In this document: positions 23,276 through 52,671 of the stretch, in pieces
Numbering within the stretch: the first letter of the stretch is position 1
How the letters are laid out: each line of letters begins with the position of its first letter
IMG/VR virus record: IMGVR_UViG_3300050120_000152
Span: 186,001 to 250,000 of that record
DNA length: 64,000 nucleotides
Reading direction: 5' to 3' (one strand)
Program-made: the position numbers and the translations under genes
The notes under the pieces: model-generated
The model's input: the letters and a program-made list of their open reading frames with translations, nothing else
Databases searched by the model: none
Told to the model about the DNA's origin: nothing

Positions 23276-23304
23276 AAATAAAGCCCCGAAAGGGGCTTTA
23301 TTTT
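23275..23304. terminator. bidirectional intrinsic terminator
   Basis: aaaataaagcccc-gaaa-ggggctttatttt. Confidence 0.9.
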
Positions 23305-24611: not shown

Positions 24612-24612
24612 C

Positions 24613-29277: not shown

Positions 29278-30870
29278 TTATGCTGGGCATGTTCCCCAAA
29301 CTGGTCTAGCATCTGTCCATGCTGTTGCATTTGTATCAAAATCTGCTGGTAATGTTGAAATGAGTGTGACACACCAATGAGATAAATCTTGATTGAATGC
29401 TTCAGCATTTGCAAACATAGCAGACATATTTGATACTTTACTGGTATTCCATGTACCAATATCTTGATTGAATACTGAAGCACTTTGAAACATTTGACTC
29501 ATATCAGTTACATGACTGGTATCCCATGATGATAAATCTTGATTAAATGCTGAAGTATCATAAAACATATTATTCATATTAGTTACAGCACTAGTATTCC
29601 ATGATGATAAATCTTGATTAAATGCTGACGCACCACTAAACATACTATTCATATTAGTTACAGCACTAGTATTCCATGATGAAATATCTTGATTGAATAC
29701 TGAAGCACCATTAAACATATTAGACATATCAGTTAATGTTGTTGGTATTGATGATGGCACTTCATATACTGAAGTAGGAGGGACAATACTAGTCACATTA
29801 TATGTACCAAATGATAATATTTTAGAATTAGATGGTGGTACAGTACCATCCTGTTCATAACCAGATATGGATGATGAGTCGCCATACATTTTAACTATAT
29901 AAGTTCCAACAGAACCATAAGTATGTAATATATAAGTGGCATCAGACATAGTATCAATAGCTGATCCGTCACCCCAATCTAAAGTTATCCCAGAATCGGC
30001 ATCAACCTCAACTATTCCTGTTGAATCAAATTGAATTGTATATGGGGTCTGGGCAATTGCTGATGGGGTAGGAGTTGGAACAGGTGAATAAGGTACATAT
30101 TTTACTAAACTTATATTATCTATGGTATAATCATACCCATTAGGAGCATACATATTATAATTTGAGTCTGCATATAATGATATAGCTACTTGTATAGATG
30201 TTACCCCTGATGGAATTAATAGTTCATAATTAAATGATCCACTACTCATATTCGTGACGTTAAATATATCACTATTAGATACATTAATACTCATTAATGG
30301 AATATCTGATCTAGTTAACGATTGGGTTAAAGCATAAATTTCAATAATAGCATATTGGCACGCGCCTTCATTAAATCTGGCATTAAATTTATAATTACCG
30401 CCAGCCGTTACAGTCATTGGTGATGATGTAAAATCTACTTGCTGCGTTCCACTATTATTGGAAATAAACTTAGTTAGTATATCTGTTTGTACAACTGTAC
30501 CATTATTTGTAGTCCATGCGGTATTAGCCAACAAATTTGGGTAAATGACTGGCGATGGTGTTGGTGTCATTGTCAATGTTGATGATGGCTTAGGAGTTCT
30601 TGTAGGAGTGGGAGATAATGACTGTGAAATAGATGGTGTAGGAGTAATCAAAAATGTATTTTTATACACTTCAGCTCTACCAAAGGTACCATGTAGCGTT
30701 GGACTATTAAAAGTTTCATTGCTCATCGTATCGTACATAAAAATGGTGATCGAATCCCCATTAATATCAACAATGACACCATTTCTTATGTTTAGACTAT
30801 CAATTAGCCAAATATTGTCATTAATTTCCCAAGCATACCCATGTAAATTATATCTAGCCATATATGTCAT
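29278..30870 (-). CDS. modular surface protein: N-domain/TP linker/CBM-like/TP/PKD-like/5 DUF285 (BspA-like) repeats
   Basis: PTPS linkers; DWGDG..HTY; 25-aa FNQD.SSW.TS.VT.M..MF repeats; ends PVWGTCPA. Confidence 0.85.
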   Translation of the reverse strand: MTYMARYNLHGYAWEINDNIWLIDSLNIRNGVIVDINGDSITIFMYDTMSNETFNSPTLHGTFGRAEVYKNTFLITPTPSISQSLSPTPTRTPKPSSTLTMTPTPSPVIYPNLLANTAWTTNNGTVVQTDILTKFISNNSGTQQVDFTSSPMTVTAGGNYKFNARFNEGACQYAIIEIYALTQSLTRSDIPLMSINVSNSDIFNVTNMSSGSFNYELLIPSGVTSIQVAISLYADSNYNMYAPNGYDYTIDNISLVKYVPYSPVPTPTPSAIAQTPYTIQFDSTGIVEVDADSGITLDWGDGSAIDTMSDATYILHTYGSVGTYIVKMYGDSSSISGYEQDGTVPPSNSKILSFGTYNVTSIVPPTSVYEVPSSIPTTLTDMSNMFNGASVFNQDISSWNTSAVTNMNSMFSGASAFNQDLSSWNTSAVTNMNNMFYDTSAFNQDLSSWDTSHVTDMSQMFQSASVFNQDIGTWNTSKVSNMSAMFANAEAFNQDLSHWCVTLISTLPADFDTNATAWTDARPVWGTCPA

Positions 30871-30916
30871 TCTATTATAGCTATATTTAGTCTAATTTAC
30901 TACATGAATAATATTT

Positions 30917-31297
30917 TTATAGATATCCATTAGAACTAAATTGAGTGGATTCGATAATGTAATTATGAGAATAATAACCATTATGAGAATTACCTAAAGT
31001 AATTTTAAGAGTGCCTGCAGAGGTTATAATATCTACAGTAATTTCACCCCCGCCATCGTAGTAGTCTACTGTGGATGGTTCTTTAGACTCTTCTATATTA
31101 AGTAATTCTTTGTCAATGAACTGGGCAAGCTCATCAGGAGAGTGAGTTGCATCCCATCGCTCGCAACAATAGGATGTATTACAGATGCCCAATTTAATGG
31201 TTTGTTCAGTTGTGACAATAATACATCCATCATAAGAATAATAACTGCTGTCAGTTGTCGAGAATCCATTTGTTGAAATTGATATAATTTTTTCCAT
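30917..31297 (-). CDS. conserved phage hypothetical protein
   Basis: CCE...HNGYYS motif common in phages. Confidence 0.7.
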   Translation of the reverse strand: MEKIISISTNGFSTTDSSYYSYDGCIIVTTEQTIKLGICNTSYCCERWDATHSPDELAQFIDKELLNIEESKEPSTVDYYDGGGEITVDIITSAGTLKITLGNSHNGYYSHNYIIESTQFSSNGYL

Positions 31298-31299
31298 AC

Positions 31300-31998
31300 T
31301 TAAACCCCTGCCAACTCTTGTAATGATGCTTCAATAACACCCTCAATATTATTTCTGGCAATATTTTCATACTTATTGTGAAAATATTCTGTATAATAGA
31401 TGGTAGGCTTTTTAAGTATGCTTGTTAAAAACGTTATACGATTTTGAATCATTACATCTTTATACAACCCTAATTCAGCATATTCCTCAAATATTTTATC
31501 AGAATCAAGATATACTTGACCAAATTTACGCCCAAAACCTGCCATATCCATATCCAATAGAATTGGAGTCGTGTCATATCTAAATTCTGTTATATACGTT
31601 AGGTGTTTTTCTGTTGCGCGAATATTATGTTCTATTTCAGCACTATAATGGTGTAGTACAAACTTTTTATCCGAAGATACATCAGATGTTCCATAAAGCC
31701 AATTATTAAATAATTTTGCTGACTCCAATTCATTTGAAGAATGTTCATAATACGGATAAGGAGAATAAATGGCATCATGAAACCACCATGAATATACAAT
31801 TGCTTCTTCCTGTTTCGGTGATAACGTAACAGAATTCCGACATTCTGCAAACTTAGATAAACCAAAATTAATGTGGTTCATATCATGATAATATCGCTGT
31901 GGCGAATTATATAGCGGAACTAACAATTGCATTGCATTTGGATGAATAGTAAACATAAAAACCCCCGGCATAGTTGGTCTTAACCGGAATTGTATCAC
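31300..31998 (-). CDS. HD-superfamily phosphohydrolase
   Basis: RYYHDMNHI, WFHDAIY, NELESA, LLDMDMA. Confidence 0.85.
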   Translation of the reverse strand: MIQFRLRPTMPGVFMFTIHPNAMQLLVPLYNSPQRYYHDMNHINFGLSKFAECRNSVTLSPKQEEAIVYSWWFHDAIYSPYPYYEHSSNELESAKLFNNWLYGTSDVSSDKKFVLHHYSAEIEHNIRATEKHLTYITEFRYDTTPILLDMDMAGFGRKFGQVYLDSDKIFEEYAELGLYKDVMIQNRITFLTSILKKPTIYYTEYFHNKYENIARNNIEGVIEASLQELAGV

Positions 31999-32013
31999 AA
32001 TTATGTTATATAG

Positions 32014-32808
32014 TCAAATTGATAGTTTGTCTATATTATCAAGGCTATCCATATAATACCACTCTTTATATTGCATTGCATCAGATAAACAGCGTCGTCT
32101 AACCTGTACTGTACTACTAAAATTAAAATATTCTACTACCGCCGTTACACTAGGAAATGTTCCATTAGGAGTCATTATAACTCTATTAGATAATTTTATA
32201 TTGTTCGATGCAATAGGCACAATAGAATTATATGACCATTTATATCCTTTACAATTTGAAAATTTGCCTTCGGCAGTATATTTAATATTAGATGGTGATG
32301 TATTTACAAAATCAGCAGCTTCAGATAGGCACATAAACGTATGAGCTAATGTCCCATTAAGATGAAAACAAAAAATTTTTTTCTCGTGAAATAGACGTAA
32401 AGCCTTTTTACAATTTTCTGAAATTTTCTTTTTAGATTTTTTACTATGAACATGACCTCTAAATAATCCATTTTTAACTTGTTCTGATGGATTATCTTTA
32501 TAATTTTGTTTCTTTAAAGTTGAAATTTTTCTTTTAATCCATCCATATTGTTTATTGGTTTGTCTTCTATCAGTATCGTGAGTAGCCAATAATGATGCTG
32601 CAAATGCTAATCCCAAATTAAATGGATATATTTTTGTCAATAATTGATGGGCTAAATAATGTTCTTCGGGCGTTAACTTGACTATATTATTTGGGTCATT
32701 ACTCCCATTCATACATTTTGGAATTATGTGGTGTTTTTCACAATAACCGATTAGCTTCCGATCTTTTGCTTTACTAATTAAATTGTCATAAATTTTAATA
32801 TAATTCAT
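32014..32808 (-). CDS. HNH homing endonuclease with NUMOD1-like domains (Mob-like)
   Basis: YCEKHHIIPKCMNG...NIVKLTPEEHYLAHQLL; EAA.FV..SPSNI; TPNGTFPS; adjacent to nrdB. Confidence 0.85.
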   Translation of the reverse strand: MNYIKIYDNLISKAKDRKLIGYCEKHHIIPKCMNGSNDPNNIVKLTPEEHYLAHQLLTKIYPFNLGLAFAASLLATHDTDRRQTNKQYGWIKRKISTLKKQNYKDNPSEQVKNGLFRGHVHSKKSKKKISENCKKALRLFHEKKIFCFHLNGTLAHTFMCLSEAADFVNTSPSNIKYTAEGKFSNCKGYKWSYNSIVPIASNNIKLSNRVIMTPNGTFPSVTAVVEYFNFSSTVQVRRRCLSDAMQYKEWYYMDSLDNIDKLSI

Positions 32809-32829
32809 TTAAATACTCTGATATCAGAG

Positions 32830-32837
32830 TATTTATA
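32830..32837 (-). promoter_or_regulatory. T4-like late promoter
   Basis: TATAAATA upstream of the HNH gene. Confidence 0.6.
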
Positions 32838-32877
32838 CTATAAAAATACATTTATATTAACTTAATACGTATTAACA

Positions 32878-34002
32878 TTATTTAAGAAATTTATTTAAAT
32901 CTTTGAGAATTAGTCGTTTATCTTTTGATTTATCTAAGCCACCCACAATATAGCTTACAGATTCGCTTTCTTGGTTAGCTACTTGGGTATCTTTTCCCGA
33001 TATCCAACTCTGAGTCCATGGTAATGGATTGGCTGCTGGGACAGCATAGGGTAATTTCAGACCGATTGAATCCATGCGTTTTTTGGCTATCCAATCAACG
33101 TAATCGCCTAAGACACTCTCATTCAACCCCAAAATAGACCCATGTTGAAATAGATATTTTGCCCATTCTTTTTCTTGTTCAATACATTCTAAAAACATAT
33201 TAATACTATATTGTTCTAAATCTTTAGATATTTTAACAAAATCTTCATCATCCTGTGGTAAAATTTTAAGTAAATATTGAGTAAATCCAAGATGTACATT
33301 CTCATCTCTGCATATAAGTTTAATTATATCGGCATTTCCTATCATAAGTTTTTGCTCAGCAAATGCCCATGAGCATGCGAACGAAACATAAAACCTTATA
33401 CCTTCTAATATATTAGCTGCCATAAGAGCTTTCCATATATTAACTTTATGATCGTAAATATTGTATCCATCAATATATCCGAATAAATCGACATGTTGAT
33501 TATAGTGGTGTAGATCATCATATGGTTTTGTGATTGCAGCAGCACGTTGGATAATTTCATCAATTTCTGTTACTGTGTCAAATACTTCGGTCGTGTTGGT
33601 TATAATATTTCTTAAAATATGTGAATAAGAATTTGAATGAATTGATTCGAAGAATGCCCAAGCTTTGCAGAAATGTTCAATCTCTGGCAATGTTGTTATA
33701 GCAGAAAATAATGCCTCTGGTGCGCGACTTTGTACACTATCTAATAATGTCTGAAACTTTAAATTACTAGTAAATATGTGTTTAGCTGCAATAGAAAGAG
33801 TATTAAAATCTCGTTCATCTTTTTCTAGAGATATTTCTTGTGGACGCCAGAAAAATCCTTCTTGTATTTCTCTAAATTTTTGTATTCTTGGATATTTTAC
33901 TTGTTCAAATCTTGACAAAGTTACGCCATTATTATCATCATCCAAGAATATTTTACATTTTATGGGAGATTTTTTATTGTTTAAATTAAATAGTGATTTC
34001 AT
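32878..34002 (-). CDS. nrdB: class Ia ribonucleotide reductase beta subunit
   Basis: FFWRPQEI, LLDSVQ, ESIHSNSYSHI, LEGIRFYVSFACS, RDENVH. Confidence 0.97.
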   Translation of the reverse strand: MKSLFNLNNKKSPIKCKIFLDDDNNGVTLSRFEQVKYPRIQKFREIQEGFFWRPQEISLEKDERDFNTLSIAAKHIFTSNLKFQTLLDSVQSRAPEALFSAITTLPEIEHFCKAWAFFESIHSNSYSHILRNIITNTTEVFDTVTEIDEIIQRAAAITKPYDDLHHYNQHVDLFGYIDGYNIYDHKVNIWKALMAANILEGIRFYVSFACSWAFAEQKLMIGNADIIKLICRDENVHLGFTQYLLKILPQDDEDFVKISKDLEQYSINMFLECIEQEKEWAKYLFQHGSILGLNESVLGDYVDWIAKKRMDSIGLKLPYAVPAANPLPWTQSWISGKDTQVANQESESVSYIVGGLDKSKDKRLILKDLNKFLK

Positions 34003-34011
34003 ATAGTTTCC

Positions 34012-36456
34012 TTATAATTTACAGGCAGAGCAATCATCTTCTTCGATTAAATCAGGTTGGTTTTCTTTTATATGATGATGTGTGATTAACGGTTCAGAAT
34101 AATCATCGGTGGCACCATCATGAATATTATTATAATATAGGGTAGTTCCACCCAAGTTATAATGCATGAATATATCTTTGATAATAACATCGAACGGGAT
34201 TTTTCCATTAAATTTTTCTGGATTATATGATGTATTAACCGATGTTGCTTGATCAATCCATTTAGAAATAACTCCTATTATTTTTAAATACCCAGTCGCA
34301 CCCTCCTGATCCCATAACAGGTCATACTTATTTTTAAGTTTTGTGTATTCTGGGACAACCAATTTAAGTACACCATCTTTGGATTTCTTTTTAGACACTA
34401 ATGTTCTTGGTGGCTCAACACCATTAGTAGCTCCAACCAACTGTGAACTACTCTCACTCGGCATATTAGCCAATAATGAAGCATTTCGTATACCATAGGT
34501 AAGTAAATCACTTCTAAGAGTTTCCCAATCCATTCTAAGCTTCATAGGAACTAATTTATCAATAGCCTTAGCTCGACGTTCCCATGGAAATTCACCCTTG
34601 GCCCATTTAGTACGTCCCCAAGCTTCACACGGCCCAAATTCTTTAGCTAATTGGACTGATGCTTTAATAGCATAATAGGACATAGCTTCCATATATTCAT
34701 CGACTAATTCTAATGCAGATTCATCATATCTTACACCGTGTTTAGCAAGAAAATATGCTAAATTATTAATACCAATACCTAATGTTCTGAAATCTCTCGT
34801 AGCCAATTCCGACTCAATTAATGGGTAATCTTGATAACTAAGAATAGCGTCTAATGCTCTAATAGCGGCTTCCATGGGTTTTTCAAAATCTTCAGGTTTT
34901 TTAATATTACCCCAGTTTATTGCACTTAATGTACATAGAAAAATTCGCGCTCCATTCAATGTAATGCCATAAATGGTTCCAGAATCGGTAATTTCTAATC
35001 GTTCAAAATTAATTACTTCTCTATTTTTTGACCATTCTAACACTTGTTCTAACTCGAATCTTTTATCTACTTCTACAGTTTTTGTTATTGTTGTTCCCAT
35101 GGGTTTTGAATTCAATAAAATTTCTTGACAAAGATTACTTTGTTCAATAGGATCAATATCTGGATCATATGGACTATGATAATTAGCATTGTCAATATTT
35201 AAAAGATAAATTCTACCTGTATTAACTCGTTCTTCAATAAATTTATCCATTAAACTATAAGCAGATATTCTTTTTGTTTTAGCAAATTTAGGGTCAGCTT
35301 CATATTTTTCATACAATGATTCAAACGCATCATTATCAGAATGATAAAATGCCTTCATTAAATCGGGTACGTCCGAAGGATTGAACAATGTAATAACACC
35401 ATCTTCAGCTACTCGCTTATAAAATAATCTATTAACTGTGAATGAATAATCCATTTGACGGACACGATTATCTTCGGTACCCTTATTATTTTTAAGAACT
35501 AATTGATTTTCGATTTCGGGATGAAAATATATGATATGAGTAGTCATCGACCCATTTCTAACAGAACCTTGAGAACAACTTTTTAATGATGCCTGAAAAG
35601 TTTTTAGAAACGGTGTTACGCCGGTATGAACTGCATTACCACCGCGAATAGCTGATCCTTCAGCACGAATTCTACCCACGCTTAGACCGATACCAGCTTT
35701 TCTTGACACATAATCAATAATAGCTGCGTTACCTGCTTTTATACTTTCTAAAGAATCATCTACACTGATGCCAACACACGAACTAAATTGACGTTCACTG
35801 GTTCTCAATCCTGCTAATACTGGTGTAGGAATGGTTATATAAAATTGGCTCAATAAATTATAATAATCTTTGACATGCTTTATACGAACATCTTTGGGAT
35901 AAGCATTGAATGCTGTTGCAGCAATAAGCATGTATGCAATTTGTGGCGTTTCATATTTTTCTTTGGTTACACGATTTTGCACTAAATATTTACTAACCCA
36001 TTGTTCCATTCCAGCATAAACAATATCGAAATCTCTATCATGTTTGATGAATTTATTTAATTCATCAAACTCAGTTTCATCATACCAATTTAATAGTTCA
36101 GGTGTGTATACTTCTTTTAATACATTAGATTTTACTATCGTATAAAGATCAAATGGATTAGATTGGTTGTAAATATCTTTCCTCAATTGATAATTTAATA
36201 ATTTTGACGCAACCAATTGATAATTTGGAGCTTCTTCTGAAATAAGATCAGCAGCAGTTTTTATCAATGTACTATGGATTTGTTTAGTTGTGATTTCTTG
36301 AAAAAATTTTAATTGACTTTTCATTTCTAAATCTGAAATTGATACCCCAGATATTCCTTCACATGCCCATGTCACCACCCTATGTATTTTTTCTAAATTT
36401 AGCTCTTCATGAGTGCCATCTCTCTTAACTACCATTATCTTACTATCGTTTACCAT
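34012..36456 (-). CDS. nrdA: class Ia ribonucleotide reductase alpha subunit
   Basis: ATP cone VVKRDG; TP.LAG; FSSC; SQGSVR; SNLCQE; LCTLSA; GIGINN; MPSESSS. Confidence 0.97.
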   Translation of the reverse strand: MVNDSKIMVVKRDGTHEELNLEKIHRVVTWACEGISGVSISDLEMKSQLKFFQEITTKQIHSTLIKTAADLISEEAPNYQLVASKLLNYQLRKDIYNQSNPFDLYTIVKSNVLKEVYTPELLNWYDETEFDELNKFIKHDRDFDIVYAGMEQWVSKYLVQNRVTKEKYETPQIAYMLIAATAFNAYPKDVRIKHVKDYYNLLSQFYITIPTPVLAGLRTSERQFSSCVGISVDDSLESIKAGNAAIIDYVSRKAGIGLSVGRIRAEGSAIRGGNAVHTGVTPFLKTFQASLKSCSQGSVRNGSMTTHIIYFHPEIENQLVLKNNKGTEDNRVRQMDYSFTVNRLFYKRVAEDGVITLFNPSDVPDLMKAFYHSDNDAFESLYEKYEADPKFAKTKRISAYSLMDKFIEERVNTGRIYLLNIDNANYHSPYDPDIDPIEQSNLCQEILLNSKPMGTTITKTVEVDKRFELEQVLEWSKNREVINFERLEITDSGTIYGITLNGARIFLCTLSAINWGNIKKPEDFEKPMEAAIRALDAILSYQDYPLIESELATRDFRTLGIGINNLAYFLAKHGVRYDESALELVDEYMEAMSYYAIKASVQLAKEFGPCEAWGRTKWAKGEFPWERRAKAIDKLVPMKLRMDWETLRSDLLTYGIRNASLLANMPSESSSQLVGATNGVEPPRTLVSKKKSKDGVLKLVVPEYTKLKNKYDLLWDQEGATGYLKIIGVISKWIDQATSVNTSYNPEKFNGKIPFDVIIKDIFMHYNLGGTTLYYNNIHDGATDDYSEPLITHHHIKENQPDLIEEDDCSACKL

Positions 36457-36594
36457 GCTACTATATTTCCCTTATTTTTATTCTTTTTGCGTCTTTCATT
36501 TTGCTGGTTTACTATTTAGATGCTTATTTTTAGTTATTTTATTTTACCATCATTATCATCAACTTAAGTTGAAGTAATACAATTCTTCAGCAAT

Positions 36595-37125
36595 TTAGGC
36601 TGAAGTAATGAAATTCTCATAATTTTCAATGAGAGAATATCGTATCGCATAATAATATGGAATGTCATAAATTATGATTTCACTGTTAGTTGCTAATCCT
36701 TCTATAAGATTATCAAATGTATATTGGTACTTAAGAACTTCCTTGAAAATTTTAAGACCTTTTTCACCATAATTTTCGATTAATGTAGCTAGAGTTGTCT
36801 TATATACTTCAGTAGTATTAGCCACATTTTCTGCAAACAAAAATTTATATCCATTTATCGGAAATATATAAAATGGTTCAACTTCATCACTGCAAACGGG
36901 AATGAATGAGTTCATTCCATGTGCAAATATTGAACGTTCCATCAAATTCGAATGATTATTGAATGTTTCATTGAAGGCTTCGATCAGAACATTTTGCTGT
37001 TTCTTCTTTTTTCTAACCTTTACTTTTCTAAACCCATGGTTATCCACTGGCAAATTTTTTAGTAATGGAAATCCGTTGGATTCTTGTAGAAACTGGGAGC
37101 ATTCTTCGGTGATAGTTGGTAGCAT
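36595..37125 (-). CDS. conserved jumbo-phage hypothetical protein
   Basis: 176-aa ORF; RKVKVRKKK; FYIFPINGYKF. Confidence 0.7.
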   Translation of the reverse strand: MLPTITEECSQFLQESNGFPLLKNLPVDNHGFRKVKVRKKKKQQNVLIEAFNETFNNHSNLMERSIFAHGMNSFIPVCSDEVEPFYIFPINGYKFLFAENVANTTEVYKTTLATLIENYGEKGLKIFKEVLKYQYTFDNLIEGLATNSEIIIYDIPYYYAIRYSLIENYENFITSA

Positions 37126-37178
37126 TTATACACTCTTAAAATTATCTAAATATATCGTATTAATTGCGATGTATTTAG

Positions 37179-37829
37179 ATGATGAATGATACCAAAATGC
37201 GAGATGGAATGCAACGATTTTATAATGAAGTCTCGGGTAGAGAAGTTTTCGTTATAGGTGGAGGCCCAAGCTTCCAATATGTTGACAAAAAAATGTTGGA
37301 AGGTAAATTGGTAGTATGTATAAACACTGCCTATAAAGAATTTAATAATCCTACTGCTTTATATTGGTGTGATGAAAGTTGGGTTGCTAATCATTATGAT
37401 AACATTATGAAGCATCAATGTCCATTACGGTTTACCGCTAGACATGCGGCAGATGGTCATATAACTAAAAATATTTTGGGAACTGGCAATAGCATTGTCT
37501 TGAAACGTACTGGTGATTTTGGTATAGACACTGATTTTAATCATGTTAAAGGAAATAATAGTGGCGCACATGTTATAAATTTGTTAGCTAATATGAAGGT
37601 TAGACGCATTATTTTATTGGGCTACGATTTAACCATGTCAAAAGGTAAATCTCATTGGCATGATGGACATGGATTACCTATGGCAAATCATATTTACAAT
37701 GAGTTATTTATCCCATGCTTGAATAGCATGGCAGATCCCTTGAAGAATTTAAAAATAGATATTGTAAATTGTTCGGTAGGCACTGCATTGAAATGTTTCA
37801 GAGAAGATAAATTGGAAAATTATGTATGA
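37179..37829 (+). CDS. Maf/CstII-like (GT42/DUF115 fold) putative nonulosonate transferase
   Basis: VIGGGPSF, CIN, NSGAH.INL...IILLGYD, HWH. Confidence 0.65.
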   Translation: MMNDTKMRDGMQRFYNEVSGREVFVIGGGPSFQYVDKKMLEGKLVVCINTAYKEFNNPTALYWCDESWVANHYDNIMKHQCPLRFTARHAADGHITKNILGTGNSIVLKRTGDFGIDTDFNHVKGNNSGAHVINLLANMKVRRIILLGYDLTMSKGKSHWHDGHGLPMANHIYNELFIPCLNSMADPLKNLKIDIVNCSVGTALKCFREDKLENYV

Positions 37830-40669: not shown

Positions 40670-41921
40670 GCTTGAAATATTTTTAGATGATATATTAGCA
40701 ATCAATGGTTCTCTAATAGATTTTAGAATATATGATACGAGTCGATTTACAACACTTATAACGCGAACATCATCTACAAATAAAAAAGTTTATGGGCTAG
40801 ATACATTTTGTGGGTTAGATAAGCCTAATATATATGATTTACTAAACCCTAATCATGGTGATATAAGCGAAGGTAAATATATAATTCAAAATGTGTTTCG
40901 GCCTAACAATAGTCGCATTATAATTAAAAAAACCAACCATTATAACGATCTTGACACTATTATACCAGAAGATGAACGTTTTTGTTTTGCTCTTCTTGAT
41001 CTTAAACAATTTTCTTCCACGGAAAAGGTATTGCAATTCATTTGGGATAAAATGTCATATGGCGGGACTTTATATGTTTATGATTATGATTCAACTGCCA
41101 ATCATTCCAGTTCATATGCCATATCCCATTTTATAAAAAAATATGACAAGTATCTTAATATATCTCGCCAGATGGTAGTAGATGGAAATCGAGAGAAATT
41201 TATTGCAATAAAATGTTTTAACCCTTTAATGAAACCTATTCTACAAACAGAAGCCGTTCCCCGTGAAAAAGTAACTATTGCGATGGTGCTTAAAACTGGT
41301 GGAAAAATATATGATTATAATTATGTTAATGCTTTAGCTAAAGGCTTGAAGAAGAATCTGACTATAAATCATGAAATCGTCTGTTTAACTGACGATGCAA
41401 CTGGATTTTCGAATGATATAGATCGAGTTATCCTTTTAGCCAATGATTACCCTACATGGTGGAGTAAAATCGAATTATTTAAGGAAGGTCAGTTTGATAC
41501 CAAGCACGTTTTTTATTTGGATTTGGATACTATTGTTGTTGATAATATTGATGAAATTGTATCATACAATAGTAAATTTAGTGGTCTTCGTGATTTTTAT
41601 GGATTACATTCTCTTGGAAGTGGATTAATGTCTTGGAATACTGATTACGTCAAGCAAATATACACAAATTTCGCGCCAATAGCTAAAACCGTCATGGCTA
41701 CTTATCGTGCAGGTGATCAAAAATGGATTGATGAGCAAAAACCGTCTATCGATTATTTTCAGGATAGGTTTCCTAATGAAATATTATCTTATAAGCGTCA
41801 TTGCGTAGACTCGACTAATAACGTTTCTATACCTTCTACAGCTAAAATTATATGCTTTCACGGCAATCCTAGACCGCATACAGTAAAACATCCAAGCATC
41901 ATGCTACATTGGCAACCATAA
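40662..41921 (+). CDS. TylF-like methyltransferase fused to a GT-A glycosyltransferase
   Basis: N: YGLDTFCGL, FALLDL, GGTLYVYDY; C: WWSKIELF, YLDLD, DQKWI, CFHGNPRP. Confidence 0.75.
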   Translation: MDKLEIFLDDILAINGSLIDFRIYDTSRFTTLITRTSSTNKKVYGLDTFCGLDKPNIYDLLNPNHGDISEGKYIIQNVFRPNNSRIIIKKTNHYNDLDTIIPEDERFCFALLDLKQFSSTEKVLQFIWDKMSYGGTLYVYDYDSTANHSSSYAISHFIKKYDKYLNISRQMVVDGNREKFIAIKCFNPLMKPILQTEAVPREKVTIAMVLKTGGKIYDYNYVNALAKGLKKNLTINHEIVCLTDDATGFSNDIDRVILLANDYPTWWSKIELFKEGQFDTKHVFYLDLDTIVVDNIDEIVSYNSKFSGLRDFYGLHSLGSGLMSWNTDYVKQIYTNFAPIAKTVMATYRAGDQKWIDEQKPSIDYFQDRFPNEILSYKRHCVDSTNNVSIPSTAKIICFHGNPRPHTVKHPSIMLHWQP

Positions 41922-41957
41922 GCATAAATAATGCATAATGATCGTTTCGGATAGATA

Positions 41958-44198
41958 ATGGCAACTATAACATATAAATGCAACATATGTGAAAGAAATA
42001 TTGATTTACTTGAAAATCCAATAGGACTAACCACATTTTCTAAATGTGTTATTACATACGGCTGCAAAGGTAAAATGTTATCGGTAAAACGTAATCAAGA
42101 TAATATCCGCGAAACTTTTCCCGTTGAAGTTCCGGGATTGATAGATTATAGTCCGCGTAACGTTCTATCAAACTTCAATCAAGTTATCCCGCTAACTACA
42201 TGGGTCATTACACACAATTTAAATACCATTCCGGTGGTAACAGTGTTTGTAGATAATACCACTGGTACGCAAACTGAGCTAAATCCTACTCAATTTACGG
42301 TTATTCCTATAAATTCTAATCAATTGAAAGTAGTGTTTACGACTGCATATAGTGGCTCGATACAATTGATTTCGAGAAATTCTATAAAAGTTAATCCAAC
42401 TATTGCAGCAGCACCTACTATATTAACACAAGTAACCTCTAATGGAAATTTTGTATTTGCTGTTCCAAAATATTTAACGAAATTTTCGTATCCACCTACA
42501 GTATTACCTGCTCCGGGGTTACCTTATGATTTAGCTTCTACCAAATTGAGAATAGAAGTGAGTATCCAGAAACCAAACGAAGAGACAATTGTTTGCACTG
42601 AATTTTTAAGCACTGATCTTAGTGGAACACCTTGGAATAGTTGGAATAGTATTTTAGTAAGAAAAAGAAAAAATTACTATCTATTTGCTATCAATATATT
42701 AAATTTTAGAACTTTTGGTGGTAATACTACACAATTTAACGATATTCCAGATGGAACCCGTTTACAAATAACCAGAGTAGATTATGGTACTGGTGTATTA
42801 CAACCAGTCGATACCGAAGGTTTATTTATTATGTTATCAAACTCGCCTTATACCATTAATGATAAAATAAAAGATTCAATTGTTGATGTTGGTGATATGG
42901 TAGATAATAATATTAATTATTTTACTTATAACACATCAGATTTTTTTGTCGATCCATCAAATGTAGATAGGACATATCCTGATATTAGTAAGGTAAATCC
43001 TGTAATCCCAGTAATTGCCCCCTTACCATCAATAACACCAACTATAACGCCATCAATAACCATAACACCATCAGTAACTTTAACACCACAGGTCACTCCT
43101 ACACCTACTCCTTCACCAATACCTTATAATTTACCCCCATATTTGGCTGAACTTAACTCTGATGGTACACCAGATACACATTTCATAGATAAACAATTAG
43201 ATTCTCATATGTATGTTTCATATGAAACTTCTGATGGTCATATCTACTTCGGCGGGGATACATCCACGTCCATTCCCGGTAATTATTCTTACCTAGGGCG
43301 TCTAAATTCTGATGGATCAATAGATACTACATTTACCAACTATAATTTAGATTATGATGTTGAAACAATATATCAAACTGCTGATGGTCACATTTATATA
43401 GGTGGAAACTTTTCCACGTTTAATGGTATATCTGTACGCGGATTTGTTCGATTAAATTCTGATGGATCATTTGATAGCACATTCGCTGGTGGGTGCGATG
43501 GTGATGTTATCACGATATGCCAAACTTTAGATGGTCATATTTATGTTGGCGGTGCTTTTAACACTATATGTGGAGCTTCATATAATGGTATTGCTCGACT
43601 ATCTGCAACAGGGGTAATTGATAGCACATTTATAGCACCAGTGTCAAGTTCTATATCAGTAAATTGCATCATACAAACTATTGATACCAATATTTATGTT
43701 TGTAATGCCTCCAATCCCACTACATATACTAATTTTTGTAGGTTGACTTCTGCTGGTATACTAGATACGTCTTTCACTGATTTGACGATTGATAATATAG
43801 TCAAGGTGGCATATCAAACTTCTGATGGATCGATCTACATTGGTGGCAGTTTTAATAATGTAGGAGGGTATTCCTACCCCAAGCTCGCCAAACTAAATTC
43901 GGATGGCACCATTAACAATGCATTTGCATTATCTAAACCCCAAGTAATATCAAATATAGAAATTTTTGGAGTAATATCAACTACCTATGTATACGCTATT
44001 ATGCAGGCTATTGATAGTAAAATTTATATAGGTAGTGACAACGTCTACATAAATGGAAATTCTTATACATATTTTAGTAGATTAAACTCTGATGGATCAT
44101 TTGATAATACATTCAATTCATTGAATTTAACTGGTAGTGTATATAATATTAATAAAATATCCTCTGGGGATATCTACATTTCTGGTGCATTTAATTAA
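41958..44198 (+). CDS. structural protein: CxxC N-domain/HNL module/TP linker/7 Delta-60 (DUF5122) repeats
   Basis: YKCNIC..KCVITYGCKG; W.ITHNL; 7x RLNSDG-type repeats. Confidence 0.8.
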   Translation: MATITYKCNICERNIDLLENPIGLTTFSKCVITYGCKGKMLSVKRNQDNIRETFPVEVPGLIDYSPRNVLSNFNQVIPLTTWVITHNLNTIPVVTVFVDNTTGTQTELNPTQFTVIPINSNQLKVVFTTAYSGSIQLISRNSIKVNPTIAAAPTILTQVTSNGNFVFAVPKYLTKFSYPPTVLPAPGLPYDLASTKLRIEVSIQKPNEETIVCTEFLSTDLSGTPWNSWNSILVRKRKNYYLFAINILNFRTFGGNTTQFNDIPDGTRLQITRVDYGTGVLQPVDTEGLFIMLSNSPYTINDKIKDSIVDVGDMVDNNINYFTYNTSDFFVDPSNVDRTYPDISKVNPVIPVIAPLPSITPTITPSITITPSVTLTPQVTPTPTPSPIPYNLPPYLAELNSDGTPDTHFIDKQLDSHMYVSYETSDGHIYFGGDTSTSIPGNYSYLGRLNSDGSIDTTFTNYNLDYDVETIYQTADGHIYIGGNFSTFNGISVRGFVRLNSDGSFDSTFAGGCDGDVITICQTLDGHIYVGGAFNTICGASYNGIARLSATGVIDSTFIAPVSSSISVNCIIQTIDTNIYVCNASNPTTYTNFCRLTSAGILDTSFTDLTIDNIVKVAYQTSDGSIYIGGSFNNVGGYSYPKLAKLNSDGTINNAFALSKPQVISNIEIFGVISTTYVYAIMQAIDSKIYIGSDNVYINGNSYTYFSRLNSDGSFDNTFNSLNLTGSVYNINKISSGDIYISGAFN

Positions 44199-44221
44199 TA
44201 AATAACATAAAAGAACACATC

Positions 44222-46471
44222 ATGCAAATAAATTTTCGACAAGGTATTATAAGCAGCCAATCCTTACCACGATTTTTACAAAAAAATCTTAATGGTAATA
44301 TTGATTTTAATGCTTCTGACTCACAAACGATATTAAATTTTGCAGATGGAGCTTCAAATTATCTTTGGTATGAACCAATATCTATTACAGATGCATGGAT
44401 TACCCCAACCGAACAAGCATGTTGGTTATATTGGGATATTAGTACAGAAAATGCTACACGTAGTTTTGGATATACCTTATATAACCCATTTTCTGTAGTA
44501 GCACCATCCAATCCCCAACTCAATCAGATGTATTTTAATACGTCTACATTCAAATATCAGTCATGGACAGGCCAATACTGGCGTGACGTTATCCGCGTCA
44601 TTGCAGGGGCTGTAGATGCCTCTGGCAACATTATTACACAGAGTAGTGGAACACAGATCAATTTGTATCAAACTGTAACTACTGACGTTATAGTTTATGA
44701 TTTTACACAAATGCCGATTAAGAATTATACCCCAAATGGTTATGAATTCTTAAATAAATTTACTATAACTAATTTTAAAAATAATTCAAAGGACTCATTC
44801 AAATACGAAAGAATTGTTAATGCCAATGGAATGGCATCAGAAGATATAATTAAACATTATTGTGTTACTTGGAAGGATTATAATACATTACAACTTGCTG
44901 ATCCTGAAAAAATCAATAATCCAGCTTTTGCTTTAGCTGAAAAAATGGTAAATACCGGAGAAATAATAAGTTTATGTACTGAAGGATTTGTTGTCAACAG
45001 AACAGACTGGAATTGGCCTAATCCGCCACATACATCATTGTATGTTGGAACTAATGGTATATTAACTCCTGAATTTGATCCTACATTTTCTAAATCGCTC
45101 CAATTAGTAGGTTACATTGTGTCGCCAAATACAATATATGTCAATTTTAATAATCAATATTCAAAATATATTACGAGTAATAATACTATATTACCGACTA
45201 TCTCAGTTACACCAACCCCAGAATCTACTAGCACAATGACGCCTACGCCAACTATAACTCCAACATTGACTATGACACCAACGGCAACAGTAACCATCAC
45301 TCCTACTATTACTATAACTCCAACATTGACTATGACACCAACGGCAACAGTAACCATCACTCCTACTATTACTATAACTCCAACACCAGCTATAGTCGGA
45401 ACGGTAGAACTTTTTGCTGGTGGATATTTTCAATCATTTCATAGTCAAGCATATGGCGGATTAGCTAAAATACATTCTGATGGTACTATAGATACTGCAT
45501 TGACTCCTTTCATATTTGATAATTCTGACGGGGATGGTGTTGATACATTATATAGAACTGCTGATGGTAAAATTTATATGTGTGGATATTATATTTCCTT
45601 AAATGGTTCAACCACCTATAGATATTTAACTAGATTAAATTCTGATGGGACATTGGACAACACATTTACCAATTTAAATTTGGATAATGAAGCATATACA
45701 GCATTACAAACTATTGATGATAAAATTTATATTGGTGGATGGCTTACCAGCATTGGTGGACAATCTGTTACTGGATTAGCACGATTAAATTCTGATGGTA
45801 CATTAGATAATACGTATACACCACCTGTAATAGACCATACAATGATAGGTGGAATAGTTTCTATACAGCATATGCATCAAACAATTGATGGTAAAATTTA
45901 TATTGGGGGTAGTTTTACCACTATTGATGGCAATGCATATGGTCATTTAGCTAGGTTAAATTCTGATGGTACGTTGGATACTACATTTACTAACATTGGA
46001 TTGCCATTGGGTAGTAACACTAATCATTTATTCGCAATCTGTCAAACAATAGATGGTAAAATTTATATCAGTTGTAGTGGTTTGTGTAGATTAAATTCTG
46101 ATGGTACTATAGATAATACATTCGTTGCTCCTAATTCAACATCACCATTAACAATATACCAAACTATTGATGGTAAAATATATATGGGTAATATGACTGT
46201 ATTTAATGGAACATCCTATCAATATTTAGGATTATATCGAATGAATTCTGATGGAACTTTAGATAATAATTTTGTTCCTATAAATAATGGAAGTTATATA
46301 GAAGTCATATATCAAACCTCGGATGACAAAATATATATGTGCGCAACCCGTAATGCTTCAGGTACATCACCATTGTCGCCTATTAGATTAAATTCTGACG
46401 GTACATTAGATAATACGTTTATAACAGGAAATAATACTCCTAGTATACTTACATTACTAGAAGTTATTTAA
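44222..46471 (+). CDS. fibre/spike-like protein: 'INFRQGI' N-domain/TP linker/7 Delta-60 repeats
   Basis: N-domain paralogous to 48850; 7 RLNSDG-type repeats; ATAAATA upstream. Confidence 0.8.
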   Translation: MQINFRQGIISSQSLPRFLQKNLNGNIDFNASDSQTILNFADGASNYLWYEPISITDAWITPTEQACWLYWDISTENATRSFGYTLYNPFSVVAPSNPQLNQMYFNTSTFKYQSWTGQYWRDVIRVIAGAVDASGNIITQSSGTQINLYQTVTTDVIVYDFTQMPIKNYTPNGYEFLNKFTITNFKNNSKDSFKYERIVNANGMASEDIIKHYCVTWKDYNTLQLADPEKINNPAFALAEKMVNTGEIISLCTEGFVVNRTDWNWPNPPHTSLYVGTNGILTPEFDPTFSKSLQLVGYIVSPNTIYVNFNNQYSKYITSNNTILPTISVTPTPESTSTMTPTPTITPTLTMTPTATVTITPTITITPTLTMTPTATVTITPTITITPTPAIVGTVELFAGGYFQSFHSQAYGGLAKIHSDGTIDTALTPFIFDNSDGDGVDTLYRTADGKIYMCGYYISLNGSTTYRYLTRLNSDGTLDNTFTNLNLDNEAYTALQTIDDKIYIGGWLTSIGGQSVTGLARLNSDGTLDNTYTPPVIDHTMIGGIVSIQHMHQTIDGKIYIGGSFTTIDGNAYGHLARLNSDGTLDTTFTNIGLPLGSNTNHLFAICQTIDGKIYISCSGLCRLNSDGTIDNTFVAPNSTSPLTIYQTIDGKIYMGNMTVFNGTSYQYLGLYRMNSDGTLDNNFVPINNGSYIEVIYQTSDDKIYMCATRNASGTSPLSPIRLNSDGTLDNTFITGNNTPSILTLLEVI
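45251..45385 (+). repeat. perfect 60-bp tandem duplication (2.25 copies)
   Basis: Unit actataactccaacattgactatgacaccaacggcaacagtaaccatcactcctactatt. Confidence 0.95.
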
Positions 46472-46490
46472 TTATAATATAAATTTTATA

Positions 46491-46565
46491 CAATTAGTAG
46501 GTTACATTGTGTCACCAAATATCATATATATTAATTTTGGTAAACAATATACCAAGTATCAATAA
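46491..46565 (+). pseudogene. intergenic relic of the 3' end of the INFRQGI anchor domain
   Basis: QLVGYIVSPNIIYINFGKQYTKYQ* vs QLVGYIVSPNTIYVNFNNQYSKYI at 45101; first 23 bp identical. Confidence 0.75.
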
Positions 46566-46640
46566 GATAAATAGCTTATCATCCTATAAACCGTATGAAG
46601 TCGTATAAATATTCCATTGAATATATATTTGGAATCATGA

Positions 46641-48797
46641 ATGTCTACTCCCATAAGTCCTACCCCATCGGTAACTCCTACTATCTCTGTAACGCCAACA
46701 CCCATAAGTCCTACCCCATCGGTAACTCCTACTATCTCTGTAACGCCAACACCCATAATAGTAAGGAATATGAAACAGATGTTTCGTCGCTATAGTGATG
46801 GAACCTTGGTTGCACGAGAACAACAATATGATTTATTAAGGGGATTTCAGTTCACCCAAGCTGAAGACGCACTTACATGGGAAGTTTGTCATAATATGCA
46901 ATCTGATATGTTTGATGTAGCTATTGTAGTTAATGATATAATGGTCAATGCTGATATACAAATTATAGATAAATGTAAAATATTGATAAAATTTAATGTA
47001 CCCACATCAGGTTATGTAAATTTATTGTTCATGGATAGCTTTCCTACAGTATCAGTATGTGATTGTATAGCACCATCAACAACACCAGCGCCACCAGCAC
47101 CAACATTAACACCAACACCATCTGTATCAGTAACATCAACCCCATCAGGATTAACTCCATTAACCTTAGTATCAACAAATAATGTTGATGTTACTTACAC
47201 TGTATATACATGTGGAGCATCCAATAATGCTTCCATTGATTGGGGTGATGGCACTATTGATCCTATCCCTAATGGTGCTGTCGATGGGAGTGATAACGCA
47301 TGTTATAATGGTATAGTACATATCTATAGTACAGCAGGAACGTATACAATTAAGGTATATGGAGATTATATTGATAATGGCACAAATTCCGGTGGAATTT
47401 CCATAACTACCGATGTATCAGCTACCGCAGAGTTAACTTCATGGGGAACTTATAATGTAAATCATGTCCGGTTGCCATCAGGAATCATTTCGGTGCCATC
47501 ATCCATTCCAACAACATTAACAGATATGTCTAATATGTTTAATGGTGCTTCAGTATTCAATCAAGATATTAGTTCATGGAATACCAGCAATGTAACTAAT
47601 ATGAATAATATGTTTAATAGTGCTGCAGTATTCAATCAAGATATTAGTTCATGGAATACCAGTAATGTAACTAATATGTCTGATATGTTTGATAGTGCTA
47701 ATGATTTTAATGGAAATATTGGTTCATGGAATACCAGTAAGGTAACAGATATGTCTTATATGTTTTATAGTGCTTATGCATTTAATCAAGACCTTTCATT
47801 ATGGGATACCAGTAATGTAACTAATATGGTTATCATGTTTGCTAATGCTAATGCTTTTAATGGAAATATTGGTTCATGGAATACTAGTAAGGTAACAGAT
47901 ATGTCTTATATGTTTGGCGGTGCATTAGCGTTTAATCAAGACATATCCTCATGGAATACTAGTGCTGTAATTAATATGAATAATATGTTTTATGGTGCGC
48001 GAGTATTCAATCAAGATATTAGTTCATGGAATACCAGTAATGTAACAAATATGTCTAATATGTTTGATAGTGCGTATGCTTTTAATGGGAATATTGGTTC
48101 ATGGAATACTAGTAATGTAACTAATATGAGTAATACATTTAATGGTGCTGCTGCCTTTAATCAAGACCTTTCATTATGGGATACCAGTAAGACAACTGAT
48201 ATGAATAATATGTTTGCTGGTGCAGCATTTAATCAAGATATTTCATCATGGAACACAAGTAATGTAACTACTATGAATAGTATGTTTTATGATACTCCAG
48301 CATTTAATCAAGATTTATCATCATGGGATACCAGTCATGTAACTGATATGAGTCAAATGTTTCAAAGTGCCTCAGTATTTAATCAAAATATTGGTGCATG
48401 GAACACAATTAATGTAATTAATATGAATAATATGTTTAATTCTGCACTATTATTCAATCAGGATATTTCAACATGGAATACCAGTAATGTAACTGATATG
48501 AGTCAAATGTTTGTACATGCTAATGTATTCAATCAAAATATTGGTTCATGGAATACCAGTAATGTAACTACTATGTATGATATGTTTGATAGTGCGTATG
48601 CTTTTAATGGAAATATTGGTACATGGAATACCAGCAATGTAACTAATATGAATAATATGTTTAATAGTGCTGCAGTATTCAATCAAGATTTATCTCATTG
48701 GTGTGTAACCTTAATACCATCAATACCATCTAATTTCGCGGCTTTTACACCAGCTTGGACATTAGCAAAACCAGTCTGGGGAACATGTCCACCGTAA
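46641..48797 (+). CDS. modular surface protein: TP repeat/HNL module/TP/PKD-like/16 DUF285 repeats
   Basis: DWGDG..HIY; 25-aa DUF285 repeats; ends PVWGTCPP. Confidence 0.85.
46650..46757 (+). repeat. perfect 51-bp tandem duplication
   Basis: cccataagtcctaccccatcggtaactcctactatctctgtaacgccaaca x2 + cccata. Confidence 0.95.
48298..48370. repeat. 73-bp perfect inverted repeat with 29480-29552
   Basis: Base-by-base comparison; a second 48-bp identity links 47523-47570 and 29683-29730. Confidence 0.9.
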
Positions 48798-52002: not shown

Positions 52003-52004
52003 TA

Positions 52005-52622: not shown

Positions 52623-52671
52623 AAATCCCGATCATTAATAAATACTAAGATAATAAATTTAGGTTATTTTA

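What the first reader, a model, noticed from the sequence alone, without database searches (positions are those of the whole stretch)
29480..48370. Perfect 73-bp and 48-bp inverted identities between two divergent DUF285 adhesin genes ~19 kb apart
Seen: 29480-29552 is the exact reverse complement of 48298-48370, and 29683-29730 of 47523-47570, including synonymous sites, while the N-termini of the two genes are unrelated. Inference: recent gene conversion of repeat blocks. Crossover here would invert the intervening segment (nrdAB plus the glycosylation cluster) and swap the N-terminal parts and repeat counts (5 vs 16) of the two adhesins, a recombinase-free shufflon-like switch.
Basis: partly seen in the sequence, partly recalled or inferred. 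Interest (0 to 1): 0.62.

Follow-up and report, generated by a model that had tools for sequence, protein, structure and literature searches.

The report
Gene-conversion patches in phage adhesin paralogs
Two repeat-rich surface-protein genes of a 340-kb phage share short stretches of perfectly identical DNA, most likely because members of a six-gene family recently copied pieces from one another; nothing shows that this flips the DNA between them as a switch.

Summary
Window 29480-29552 is the reverse complement of 48298-48370 (73 nt), and 29683-29730 is that of 47523-47570 (48 nt). Both patches lie in the same reading frame in two DUF285 genes, A (29278-30870, minus strand, 5 units) and B (46641-48797, plus strand, 16 units).

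The A/B pair is not special. The window belongs to a 340,344-bp jumbo-phage record with six DUF285 paralogs, and long exact patches link many of them. They include 84 nt between A and g317, 56 and 50 nt between g51 and B, 44 nt between g51 and g317, and 43 and 42 nt between g25 and B, which are directly oriented and 208 kb apart. A null that keeps the proteins and resamples synonymous codons never reached 73, 84, 56 or 44 nt in 500 runs.

These are recent short copied tracts inside deeply diverged genes, that is, gene conversion or mosaic recombination. The phage has UvsX/RecA-like and Rad50-like genes but no invertase, integrase or reverse transcriptase.

An inversion switch is physically possible, because the chimeras would be in frame, but it is unsupported. 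Two related phages keep the nrdAB-glycosyltransferase block in the assembled orientation, and no alternative junction contig exists. The read test could not be run. I rate this as an ordinary mosaic adhesin family of modest interest.

The parts
29278..30870 (-). DUF285 gene A (530 aa). It has a class-I N-terminal module, a Pro/Thr linker, a CBM-like beta-sandwich, a second Pro/Thr linker, a PKD/Ig-like WGDG domain, five 25-aa DUF285 units and a C-terminal cap.
46641..48797 (+). DUF285 gene B (718 aa). It has a Pro/Thr linker, a class-II N-terminal domain, a WGDG Ig-like domain, sixteen DUF285 units (u10 is 24 aa) and a cap. The array is a mosaic of units closest to those of genes A, g25 and g51.
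29480..29552 (-). 73-nt exact patch, arm in gene A (units u3-u4, codons about 440-464)
48298..48370 (+). 73-nt exact patch, arm in gene B (units u11-u12, codons about 553-577)
29442..29627 (-). 186-nt tract at 92% identity to 48223-48408 that contains the 73-mer. Identity drops sharply outside it.
48223..48408 (+). Partner in gene B of the 186-nt 92% tract
29683..29730 (-). 48-nt exact patch, arm in gene A (unit u1)
47523..47570 (+). 48-nt exact patch, arm in gene B (unit u1)
30005..30088 (-). 84-nt exact patch of gene A with paralog g317 (G000 317216-317299, outside the window). It is the longest non-terminal exact repeat in the genome and lies in the linker/Ig-domain region, not in the DUF285 units.
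47736..47791 (+). 56-nt exact patch of gene B with paralog g51 (G000 51317-51372). A second patch of 50 nt lies at 47866-47915.
48578..48620 (+). 43-nt exact patch of gene B with the directly oriented paralog g25 (G000 25319-25361). A 42-nt patch lies at 47490-47531.
30917..46471 (.). Genes of the block that a crossover would invert (the segment itself is 29553-48297): DUF7448 gene, two unknown genes, nrdB, nrdA, a 176-aa gene, six glycosyltransferase/capsule-type genes and two DUF5122 propeller genes. They are arranged as divergent minus and plus blocks meeting at about 37150.
46491..46559 (+). Fossil of the end of a 44222-type N-terminal anchor module (84% to 45101-45169). It is in frame with gene B but separated from it by stop codons.

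Best explanation
The inverted identities are short, recent tracts of copied sequence between members of a six-gene family of DUF285 (PARCEL / BspA-like repeat) proteins in a 340-kb jumbo phage. The tracts arose by gene conversion or patch-wise homologous recombination. Each family member is modular: an N-terminal module, Pro/Thr linkers, in some members a carbohydrate-binding-like sandwich, an Ig/PKD-like domain, 5-16 units of 25 residues, and a conserved cap. This architecture points to glycan-binding fibres or adhesins, probably on the virion. The likely mechanism is as follows. During recombination-dependent replication, a DNA end from one paralog invades a 75-nt unit of another, helped by the phage's UvsX/RecA-like and Rad50-like proteins. 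It copies tens to a few hundred bases and then returns. This leaves a perfect patch inside genes that are otherwise 45-75% identical. Slippage of the same kind would change unit number. Shown here: the patches, their statistical excess, their family-wide distribution in both orientations, the mosaic modules, the recombination genes, and the conserved orientation of the intervening block in relatives. Inferred: the strand-invasion mechanism, the adhesin role, and that A was the donor for B units u11-u12. The donor inference rests on the fact that the 'MSQMFQSAS' unit is the penultimate unit in A, g51 and g317 but an internal unit in B. The A/B pair could also cross over and invert 18.7 kb, but I regard that as a rare by-product, not a device.
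For: The exact patches are family-wide: 84 nt A/g317, 73 and 48 nt A/B, 56 and 50 nt g51/B, 44 nt g51/g317, 43 and 42 nt g25/B (direct orientation), and 68 nt within B. The codon-resampling null reached the observed value in 0/500 runs for the 73-, 84-, 56- and 44-nt matches and in 1/500 for g25/B. In the A versus g317 codon alignment the background is 45-70% nt identity, with an abrupt patch of 97-100% in which 32/33 synonymous codons are identical. The 73-mer sits in a 186-nt 92% tract with sharp borders. Units of B are closest to units of A, g25 and g51 in a patchwork. Modules are incongruent: g263 has the class-I N-terminus of A and g317 but the Ig domain type of B and g51. A relative carries the class-I N-terminus fused to DUF5122 in the very slot of gene A. 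A RecA/UvsX-like gene and an AAA_23/Rad50-like gene are present, while no resolvase/invertase, tyrosine recombinase or reverse transcriptase was found. The relative G001 is collinear with G000 from about 273 kb to 114 kb, across the sites of g263, B and A, with no inversion ending at them, and it has no DUF285 gene. A CBM4/16/22-like fold is predicted for A residues about 110-260, and the g25 N-terminus matches a virion structural protein PHROG. In the literature, PARCEL/DUF285 arrays are described as subject to intra-genomic shuffling (PMC2996958), and tail-fibre gene mosaicism is common in T4 relatives (PMC2993671).
Against: There are no population data. The four strongest patches all join inversely oriented pairs, which would also fit crossover-associated conversion, although 15 pairs are too few to test this. 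Import of a patch from a co-infecting relative cannot be told apart from intragenomic copying. The adhesin or virion role rests on domain resemblance and a model of only moderate confidence (pLDDT 63).
Confidence: 0.75

Rival explanations
1. Recombinase-free inversion switch. Homologous crossover in the 73-nt or 48-nt patch flips 29553-48297 and swaps the C-terminal repeat arrays between the two N-terminal parts, giving the phage population alternative adhesins as an evolved function.
For: The arms are inverted, exact and in the same codon phase, so both chimeras stay in frame (605/643 aa or 804/444 aa). After inversion the divergent minus/plus gene layout is preserved. The phage has its own homologous recombination proteins. 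From my own recollection, T4 recombination needs roughly 50 bp of homology, so 73 nt would be just enough.
Against: The A/B pair is not unique. Similar patches join pairs 101-266 kb apart and a direct pair whose crossover would delete 208 kb. Two related phages keep the same orientation of the block relative to both flanks. No contig holds the 73-mer core in another context. A 340-kb contig was assembled straight through both genes. There is no invertase, and the layout differs from known switches, since the promoter and N-terminus lie inside the flipped segment instead of a constant part lying outside it.
Confidence: 0.07
2. Retained ancestry or constraint. The patches are leftovers of a recent duplication, or are held identical by protein-level selection plus the strong codon bias of an AT-rich genome, with no copying between paralogs.
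For: The background chance that identical residues use the same codon is already 70% between units of different genes. The family is lineage-specific, being absent from relative G001, so it expanded fairly recently.
Against: With the proteins held fixed, resampled codons never gave runs of 73, 84, 56 or 44 nt (0/500). The patches lie at different positions in different pairs and are flanked on both sides by sequence at 45-65% identity. A conserved nucleotide element would be shared by all paralogs at one place.
Confidence: 0.06
3. Assembly artefact. Repeat collapse or consensus polishing of short reads made two similar repeat units look identical, or mis-joined the two genes.
For: This is a metagenome assembly with 75-nt periodic repeats. 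The record's 'terminal repeat' is only a (TAA)n microsatellite, so the assembly has weak points.
Against: Both genes are intact ORFs with a regular 25-residue period and normal caps. Logan contigs built with another assembler are 100% identical over 28 kb. They break exactly k-1 = 30 nt inside the 73-mer and the 84-mer, which requires the boundary k-mers to occur in two contexts in the reads. However, these contigs probably come from the same sample.
Confidence: 0.05
4. Exchange between co-infecting related phages. The patch entered A or B from the orthologue of the other paralog in a different phage genome, not from the same molecule.
For: Mosaicism by inter-phage recombination is the rule in T4-type phages (PMC2993671). 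C-terminal modules have been replaced between related phages at the slot of gene A.
Against: The donor copy is present and 100% identical in the same genome. No other contig in the viral or metagenome collections holds the sequence, and the N-terminal module of A has no close orthologue among 5.8 billion proteins.
Confidence: 0.07

Closest known systems
PARCEL / DUF285 (PF03382, TIGR02167) repeat proteins of Mollicutes, other bacteria, jumbo phages and the giant virus Kratosvirus quantuckense (AaV) (PMC2996958, PMC7765460, PMC10720644)
   Same: 25-residue (75-nt) tandem units. Multiple dispersed paralogs with variable unit number. The literature proposes intra-genomic shuffling for them. Vibrio jumbo phage pir03 also has a BspA/DUF285 gene directly after nrdB.
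   Different: The dyad symmetry that gave PARCELs their name is not detectable here. Here the exchange is documented as discrete exact tracts between named paralogs of one phage genome.
Mosaic tail-fibre/adhesin genes of T4-type phages (PMC2993671; swapping of adhesin specificity by recombination at conserved motifs is recalled from the T-even literature, not tested here)
   Same: Conserved scaffold segments flank variable segments and serve as homology for recombination. There is a constant N-terminal anchor with an exchangeable C-terminal binding part. The phage encodes a UvsX-type recombination system.
   Different: In T-even phages the partners are alleles in different phages. Here the partners are six paralogs within one genome, and the binding modules are DUF285 and DUF5122 repeats.
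Site-specific inversion switches of phage fibre genes and shufflons (Mu Gin/G segment, P1 Cin/C segment, R64 Rci shufflon; recalled knowledge)
   Same: Inverted repeats lie inside or next to adhesin genes, so that inversion would change the C-terminal part joined to an N-terminal part.
   Different: There is no invertase or Rci-type recombinase. The flipped segment would be 18.7 kb of housekeeping genes. The promoters and N-termini lie inside the segment rather than outside. No second orientation has been seen.
Gene-conversion antigenic variation (Neisseria pilE/pilS, Borrelia vlsE, Mycoplasma genitalium MgPa/MgPar; recalled knowledge)
   Same: Short segments are copied non-reciprocally between dispersed homologous cassettes of a surface protein, giving mosaics.
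   Different: All six phage genes are full-length ORFs with their own starts. There is no single expression site with silent cassettes, and no evidence of high-frequency switching.

Membership tests
DUF285 / PARCEL repeat proteins | Tandem 25-residue units matched by PF03382 | tested here: met
   A scores E 2.5e-57 and B scores E 2.1e-206. Four further paralogs score E 1e-53 to 1e-95. W-to-W spacing is 25 residues.
DUF285 / PARCEL repeat proteins | Dyad symmetry (palindromy) of the repeat-coding DNA | tested here: not met
   The best 60-nt self reverse-complement identity is 0.55-0.62, no higher than in codon-shuffled arrays (0.55-0.60 mean, maximum 0.65). The method is cruder than the MEME search of the original paper.
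DUF285 / PARCEL repeat proteins | Several dispersed copies with variable unit number in one genome | tested here: met
   Six genes at 23, 51, 215, 233, 263 and 317 kb, with 5, 7, 5, 16, 11 and 5 units.
Site-specific DNA inversion switch / shufflon | Dedicated serine invertase or tyrosine (Rci-type) recombinase | tested here: not met
   PF00239 and PF00589 give no match in the whole 340-kb record, while the control genomes do match.
Site-specific DNA inversion switch / shufflon | Both orientations of the segment present in a population | not testable with these tools
Only indirect evidence is available: no alternative-context contig, and relatives share the assembled orientation.
Site-specific DNA inversion switch / shufflon | Constant promoter-proximal gene part outside the segment, with alternative 3' parts inside it | tested here: not met
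   Here the starts of A (30870) and B (46641) lie inside the would-be invertible segment and the 3' ends lie outside.
Gene-conversion cassette systems (pilE/pilS type) | Segmental, patchy identity between paralogs beyond protein constraint | tested here: met
Gene-conversion cassette systems (pilE/pilS type) | One expressed locus plus silent, truncated donor cassettes | tested here: not met
   All six are complete ORFs with start codons and caps. Only fragments such as 46491-46559 are non-coding.
Diversity-generating retroelement | Reverse transcriptase with a template/variable repeat pair differing at adenines | tested here: not met
   There is no RVT_1 match in the record, and the patches are identical rather than A-mutated.
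Phage receptor-binding fibre / adhesin | Conserved N-terminal anchor with exchangeable C-terminal binding module, and presence in the virion | tested here: inconclusive
   Module exchange is shown: the class-I N-terminus is joined to DUF285 here and to DUF5122 in relative P0002 at the same slot. There is a CBM-like fold, and the g25 N-terminus matches a virion structural PHROG. No proteomic or structural proof of virion location exists.

The most novel reading that the evidence does not exclude
The phage uses its own UvsX/Rad50-type recombination to keep reshuffling 75-nt repeat cassettes among six dispersed adhesin genes. This would include occasional crossover inversion of the 18.7-kb nrdAB-glycosyltransferase block between A and B. 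A single lysate would then carry a mixture of adhesin arrays, making this a diversity generator in a virus that needs neither an invertase nor a reverse transcriptase.
Probability: 0.1. Interest if true: 0.65.

Novelty: new member of a known kind. Interest (0 to 1): 0.3.

Why it matters
If the reading is right, this is a clean and statistically well-supported example of paralog-to-paralog sequence copying in the host-recognition genes of a jumbo phage. It shows how a large virus can build and remodel a repertoire of repeat adhesins from within its own genome. That matters for predicting the host range of uncultured phages, and it is a caution for assembly of such genomes. It does not reveal a new kind of switch. 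The intervening housekeeping block is simply caught between two family members that happen to face each other.

Tried and rejected
2. Contexts of the 73-mer. A 33-nt core pattern was scanned in viral contigs and in metagenome contigs and matched nothing. The window's own record is left out of those scans.
3. Near-identical phage records. Megablast of 28000-50000 against the phage collection gave no match.
4. Invertase, integrase and reverse transcriptase (DGR) were all absent. Endonuclease VII (PF02945) was also absent.
5. PARCEL dyad symmetry was not detectable.
6. Solved structures by sequence. None were found for gene B. For g25 the only match is a Pro/Thr-rich stretch.
7. The record of the second relative is not held for whole-record searches, so only its 21-kb locus was used.
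8. Two first attempts at the permutation test timed out. The third, faster version is the one cited.
9. Logan contigs cannot decide orientation because they break at every exact repeat of 31 nt or more.
10. The idea that the nrdAB-glycosyltransferase block is a mobile unit bounded by DUF285 inverted repeats was rejected, because both relatives have the block without DUF285 flanks.


Full report
**Observation**

The two inverted identities are exactly as described. Window 29480-29552 is the reverse complement of 48298-48370 (73 of 73), and 29683-29730 is that of 47523-47570 (48 of 48). The arms lie in two DUF285 genes. Gene A is at 29278-30870 on the minus strand (530 aa). Gene B is at 46641-48797 on the plus strand (718 aa). 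There are 18,745 nt between the 73-nt arms.

Gene A has five 25-residue units and gene B has sixteen, one of them 24 residues long. The 48-mer lies in unit 1 of both genes. The 73-mer spans units 3-4 of A and units 11-12 of B. Both patches are in the same codon phase in the two genes. The N-terminal domains of A and B share only the low-complexity Pro/Thr linker.

**Context**

The window is bases 186001-250000 of a 340,344-bp virus record. It is a jumbo phage with T4-type topoisomerase II subunits, nrdA and nrdB, a thymidylate synthase, and 33.7% G+C. Its topoisomerase is closest, at about 40% identity, to those of Ralstonia, Xanthomonas and uncultured huge phages.

The record holds six DUF285 genes:

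| Gene | Position in G000 | Strand | Length (aa) |
|---|---|---|---|
| g25 | 22722-25688 | + | 988 |
| g51 | 51208-52644 | - | 478 |
| A | 215278-216870 | - | 530 |
| B | 232641-234797 | + | 718 |
| g263 | 262908-264971 | - | 687 |
| g317 | 316473-318029 | + | 518 |

All six share the same plan: an N-terminal module, Pro/Thr-rich linkers, an Ig/PKD-like domain with a WGDG motif, 5-16 DUF285 units, and a conserved cap ending in PVWGTCP.

- A, g263, g317 and the short gene at window 53755-54657 share one N-terminal class.
- B and g51 share the same type of Ig-like WGDG domain (66% identity). Their N-terminal domains look alike by eye, but BLAST found no match between them.
- The g25 N-terminus matches a PHROG annotated as a virion structural protein.
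- A model of gene A (mean pLDDT 63) has a beta-sandwich at residues about 110-260. That sandwich matches CBM4, CBM16 and CBM22 carbohydrate-binding modules with a target TM-score of 0.5-0.6.

I therefore read the family as modular glycan-binding fibres or adhesins. This is an inference, not a demonstration.

**The A/B pair is not special**

I scanned the whole record for maximal exact matches on both strands. Apart from the microsatellite ends, the longest repeats are almost all in this family:

| Length (nt) | Partners | Orientation |
|---|---|---|
| 84 | A and g317 | inverted |
| 73 | A and B | inverted |
| 68 | within B | direct |
| 56 and 50 | g51 and B | inverted |
| 48 | A and B | inverted |
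| 44 | g51 and g317 | inverted |
| 43 and 42 | g25 and B | direct, 208 kb apart |

There are also many matches of 27-34 nt. Unit by unit, B is a patchwork:

- u1 is closest to A u1 (92%).
- u3, u8 and u15 are closest to g25 u2 (91-97%).
- u4 is closest to g25 u1.
- u11-u12 are closest to A u3-u4 (93% and 91%).

**Is it more than chance or constraint?**

Between units of different genes, mean nucleotide identity is 67%. Identical residues already share the same codon 70% of the time. I therefore used a conservative null. All six protein sequences were kept as they are, and every codon was redrawn from the family's own codon usage, 500 times.

- The longest A/B match under this null averaged 23 nt, with a maximum of 48.
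- The family-wide maximum averaged 29 nt, with a maximum of 52.
- The observed 73, 84, 56 and 44 nt were never reached (0 of 500).
- The 43 nt of g25/B was reached once.
- The 48-mer, taken alone, only equals the null maximum.

Along a codon alignment of A and g317, nucleotide identity is 45-70% over most of the genes. It then jumps to 97-100% over about 100 nt, with 32 of 33 synonymous codons identical, and falls back again. The 73-mer is the core of a 186-nt tract at 92% with sharp borders.

Patches at different places in different pairs, each flanked on both sides by old divergence, are the signature of copied tracts. They are not the signature of retained ancestry or of a conserved nucleotide element.

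**Is it an assembly artefact?**

Contigs made by another assembler from run SRR35930614 are 100% identical to the window over 6.2, 11.2 and 10.8 kb. They end exactly 30 nt inside the 73-mer (window 29509), 30 nt inside the 84-mer (30059), and 30 nt inside a 36-nt repeat of the DUF5122 gene (51809). That is what a k=31 graph does at a true exact repeat. These contigs cannot resolve orientation, and they probably come from the same sample.

**How it most likely works**

The record has a RecA/UvsX-like gene (G000 35972-36730) and an AAA_23/Rad50-like gene (300455-301150). It has no resolvase/invertase, no tyrosine recombinase and no reverse transcriptase.

The simplest mechanism is ectopic strand invasion between 75-nt units during recombination-dependent replication, followed by short-tract copying without crossover. 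The g25/B patches support a non-reciprocal route, because a crossover between those direct repeats would delete 208 kb. The unit type 'MSQMFQSAS' is penultimate in A, g51 and g317 but internal in B, which suggests A-like sequence was copied into B. That direction is an inference.

**The switch hypothesis**

A crossover is geometrically sound. It would invert 29553-48297, keep the divergent gene layout, and give in-frame chimeras. Those would be 804 and 444 aa, a full swap of 16 versus 5 units, if the crossover fell in the 48-mer. They would be 605 and 643 aa, about 8 and 13 units, if it fell in the 73-mer.

I found nothing that supports its use as a switch, and several things that weigh against it:

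- Relative G001 (IMG/VR 3300023048_000001, 174.6 kb, about 60% protein identity) is collinear with this genome from about 273 kb down to 114 kb. That span crosses the sites of g263, B and A. G001 has no inversion ending at those sites and no DUF285 gene at all.
- A second relative (JGI 3300012940, 175,458 bp) has the same order and orientation of the topoisomerase flank, the gene-A slot, nrdB, nrdA, the glycosyltransferase cluster and the first propeller gene.
- In that second relative, the slot of gene A holds P0002. This protein has the same N-terminal class (42% identity) but a DUF5122 propeller C-terminus. Evolution at this slot therefore proceeds by replacing the C-terminal module on a conserved anchor.
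- The assembled orientation is the ancestral one.
- A 33-nt core of the 73-mer occurs in no other viral or metagenome contig.

Rare inverted molecules therefore remain possible.

**Comparison with known systems**

The genes are members of the DUF285/PARCEL family. For that family, variable unit number, dispersed paralogs and 'intra-genomic shuffling' have been described (PMC2996958). Family members are known in jumbo phages, including one next to nrdB in Vibrio phage pir03 (PMC7765460), and in a giant algal virus with 38 copies (PMC10720644). The palindromy of PARCEL coding DNA is not seen here.

The behaviour resembles the mosaic tail-fibre genes of T4 relatives (PMC2993671) and, more loosely, bacterial gene-conversion cassettes. 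It fails the defining features of invertase switches, shufflons and diversity-generating retroelements.

**Verdict**

The gene-conversion inference is supported and extends to the whole family. The inversion-switch interpretation is unsupported. This is a new member of a known kind and of modest interest.

Noticed in passing
G000 1-130 and 340215-340344 (outside the window): Both ends of the record are about 130 nt of (TAA)n. The 'direct terminal repeat' and the resulting 100% completeness call therefore rest on a microsatellite, not on a true terminal redundancy.
   Followed up: partly
window 1788-1837 and 6666-6692, the window's first bases, and G000 175489-185201: A promoter-like element recurs at least eight times on both strands in a region of small ORFs. 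It consists of TTGACAAT, a spacer, TAAAAT, and a conserved leader AGGGTTGTGGATGGGAAGCA. This is probably a set of early promoters.
   Followed up: partly
window 46491-46559: A fossil of the last 23 codons of the N-terminal anchor of the 44222-46471 gene (84% to 45101-45169) lies in the spacer before gene B. It is in frame with B but cut by stop codons. Gene B then starts directly with a Pro/Thr linker. This suggests B once carried, or was joined to, such an anchor.
   Followed up: partly
window 53755-54657: This 300-aa gene has the class-I N-terminus and CBM-like module of A, g263 and g317. It ends in a Pro/Thr linker with no C-terminal repeat module. The relative G001 has much longer genes (1053-1545 aa) with this module at the corresponding place.
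   Followed up: partly
window 41958-46471 and 48850-52002: Three DUF5122 (delta-60-type propeller) genes lie here with 150-nt units. The 44222 and 48850 genes share a 310-aa N-terminal module (33% identity). In relative G001 the orthologous N-termini carry different and much longer C-terminal parts (1486 and 1320 aa). This is a second modular fibre family beside the DUF285 one.
   Followed up: partly
window 26405-27622: An HNH/homing-endonuclease-like ORF overlaps the start of the topoisomerase II large-subunit gene. It is absent from that position in the second relative (L024), so it is probably a free-standing homing endonuclease insertion.
   Followed up: no
window 45251-45385 and 46650-46758: Perfect tandem duplications of 75 nt (60-nt offset) and 58 nt (51-nt offset) lie inside the Pro/Thr linkers of the 44222 gene and of gene B. 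They indicate recent slippage in the linkers.
   Followed up: no
G000 262908-264971 (g263, outside the window): In relative G001 the homologues of the two genes flanking g263 abut each other. g263 is therefore a clean presence/absence difference with no rearrangement of its flanks.
   Followed up: partly
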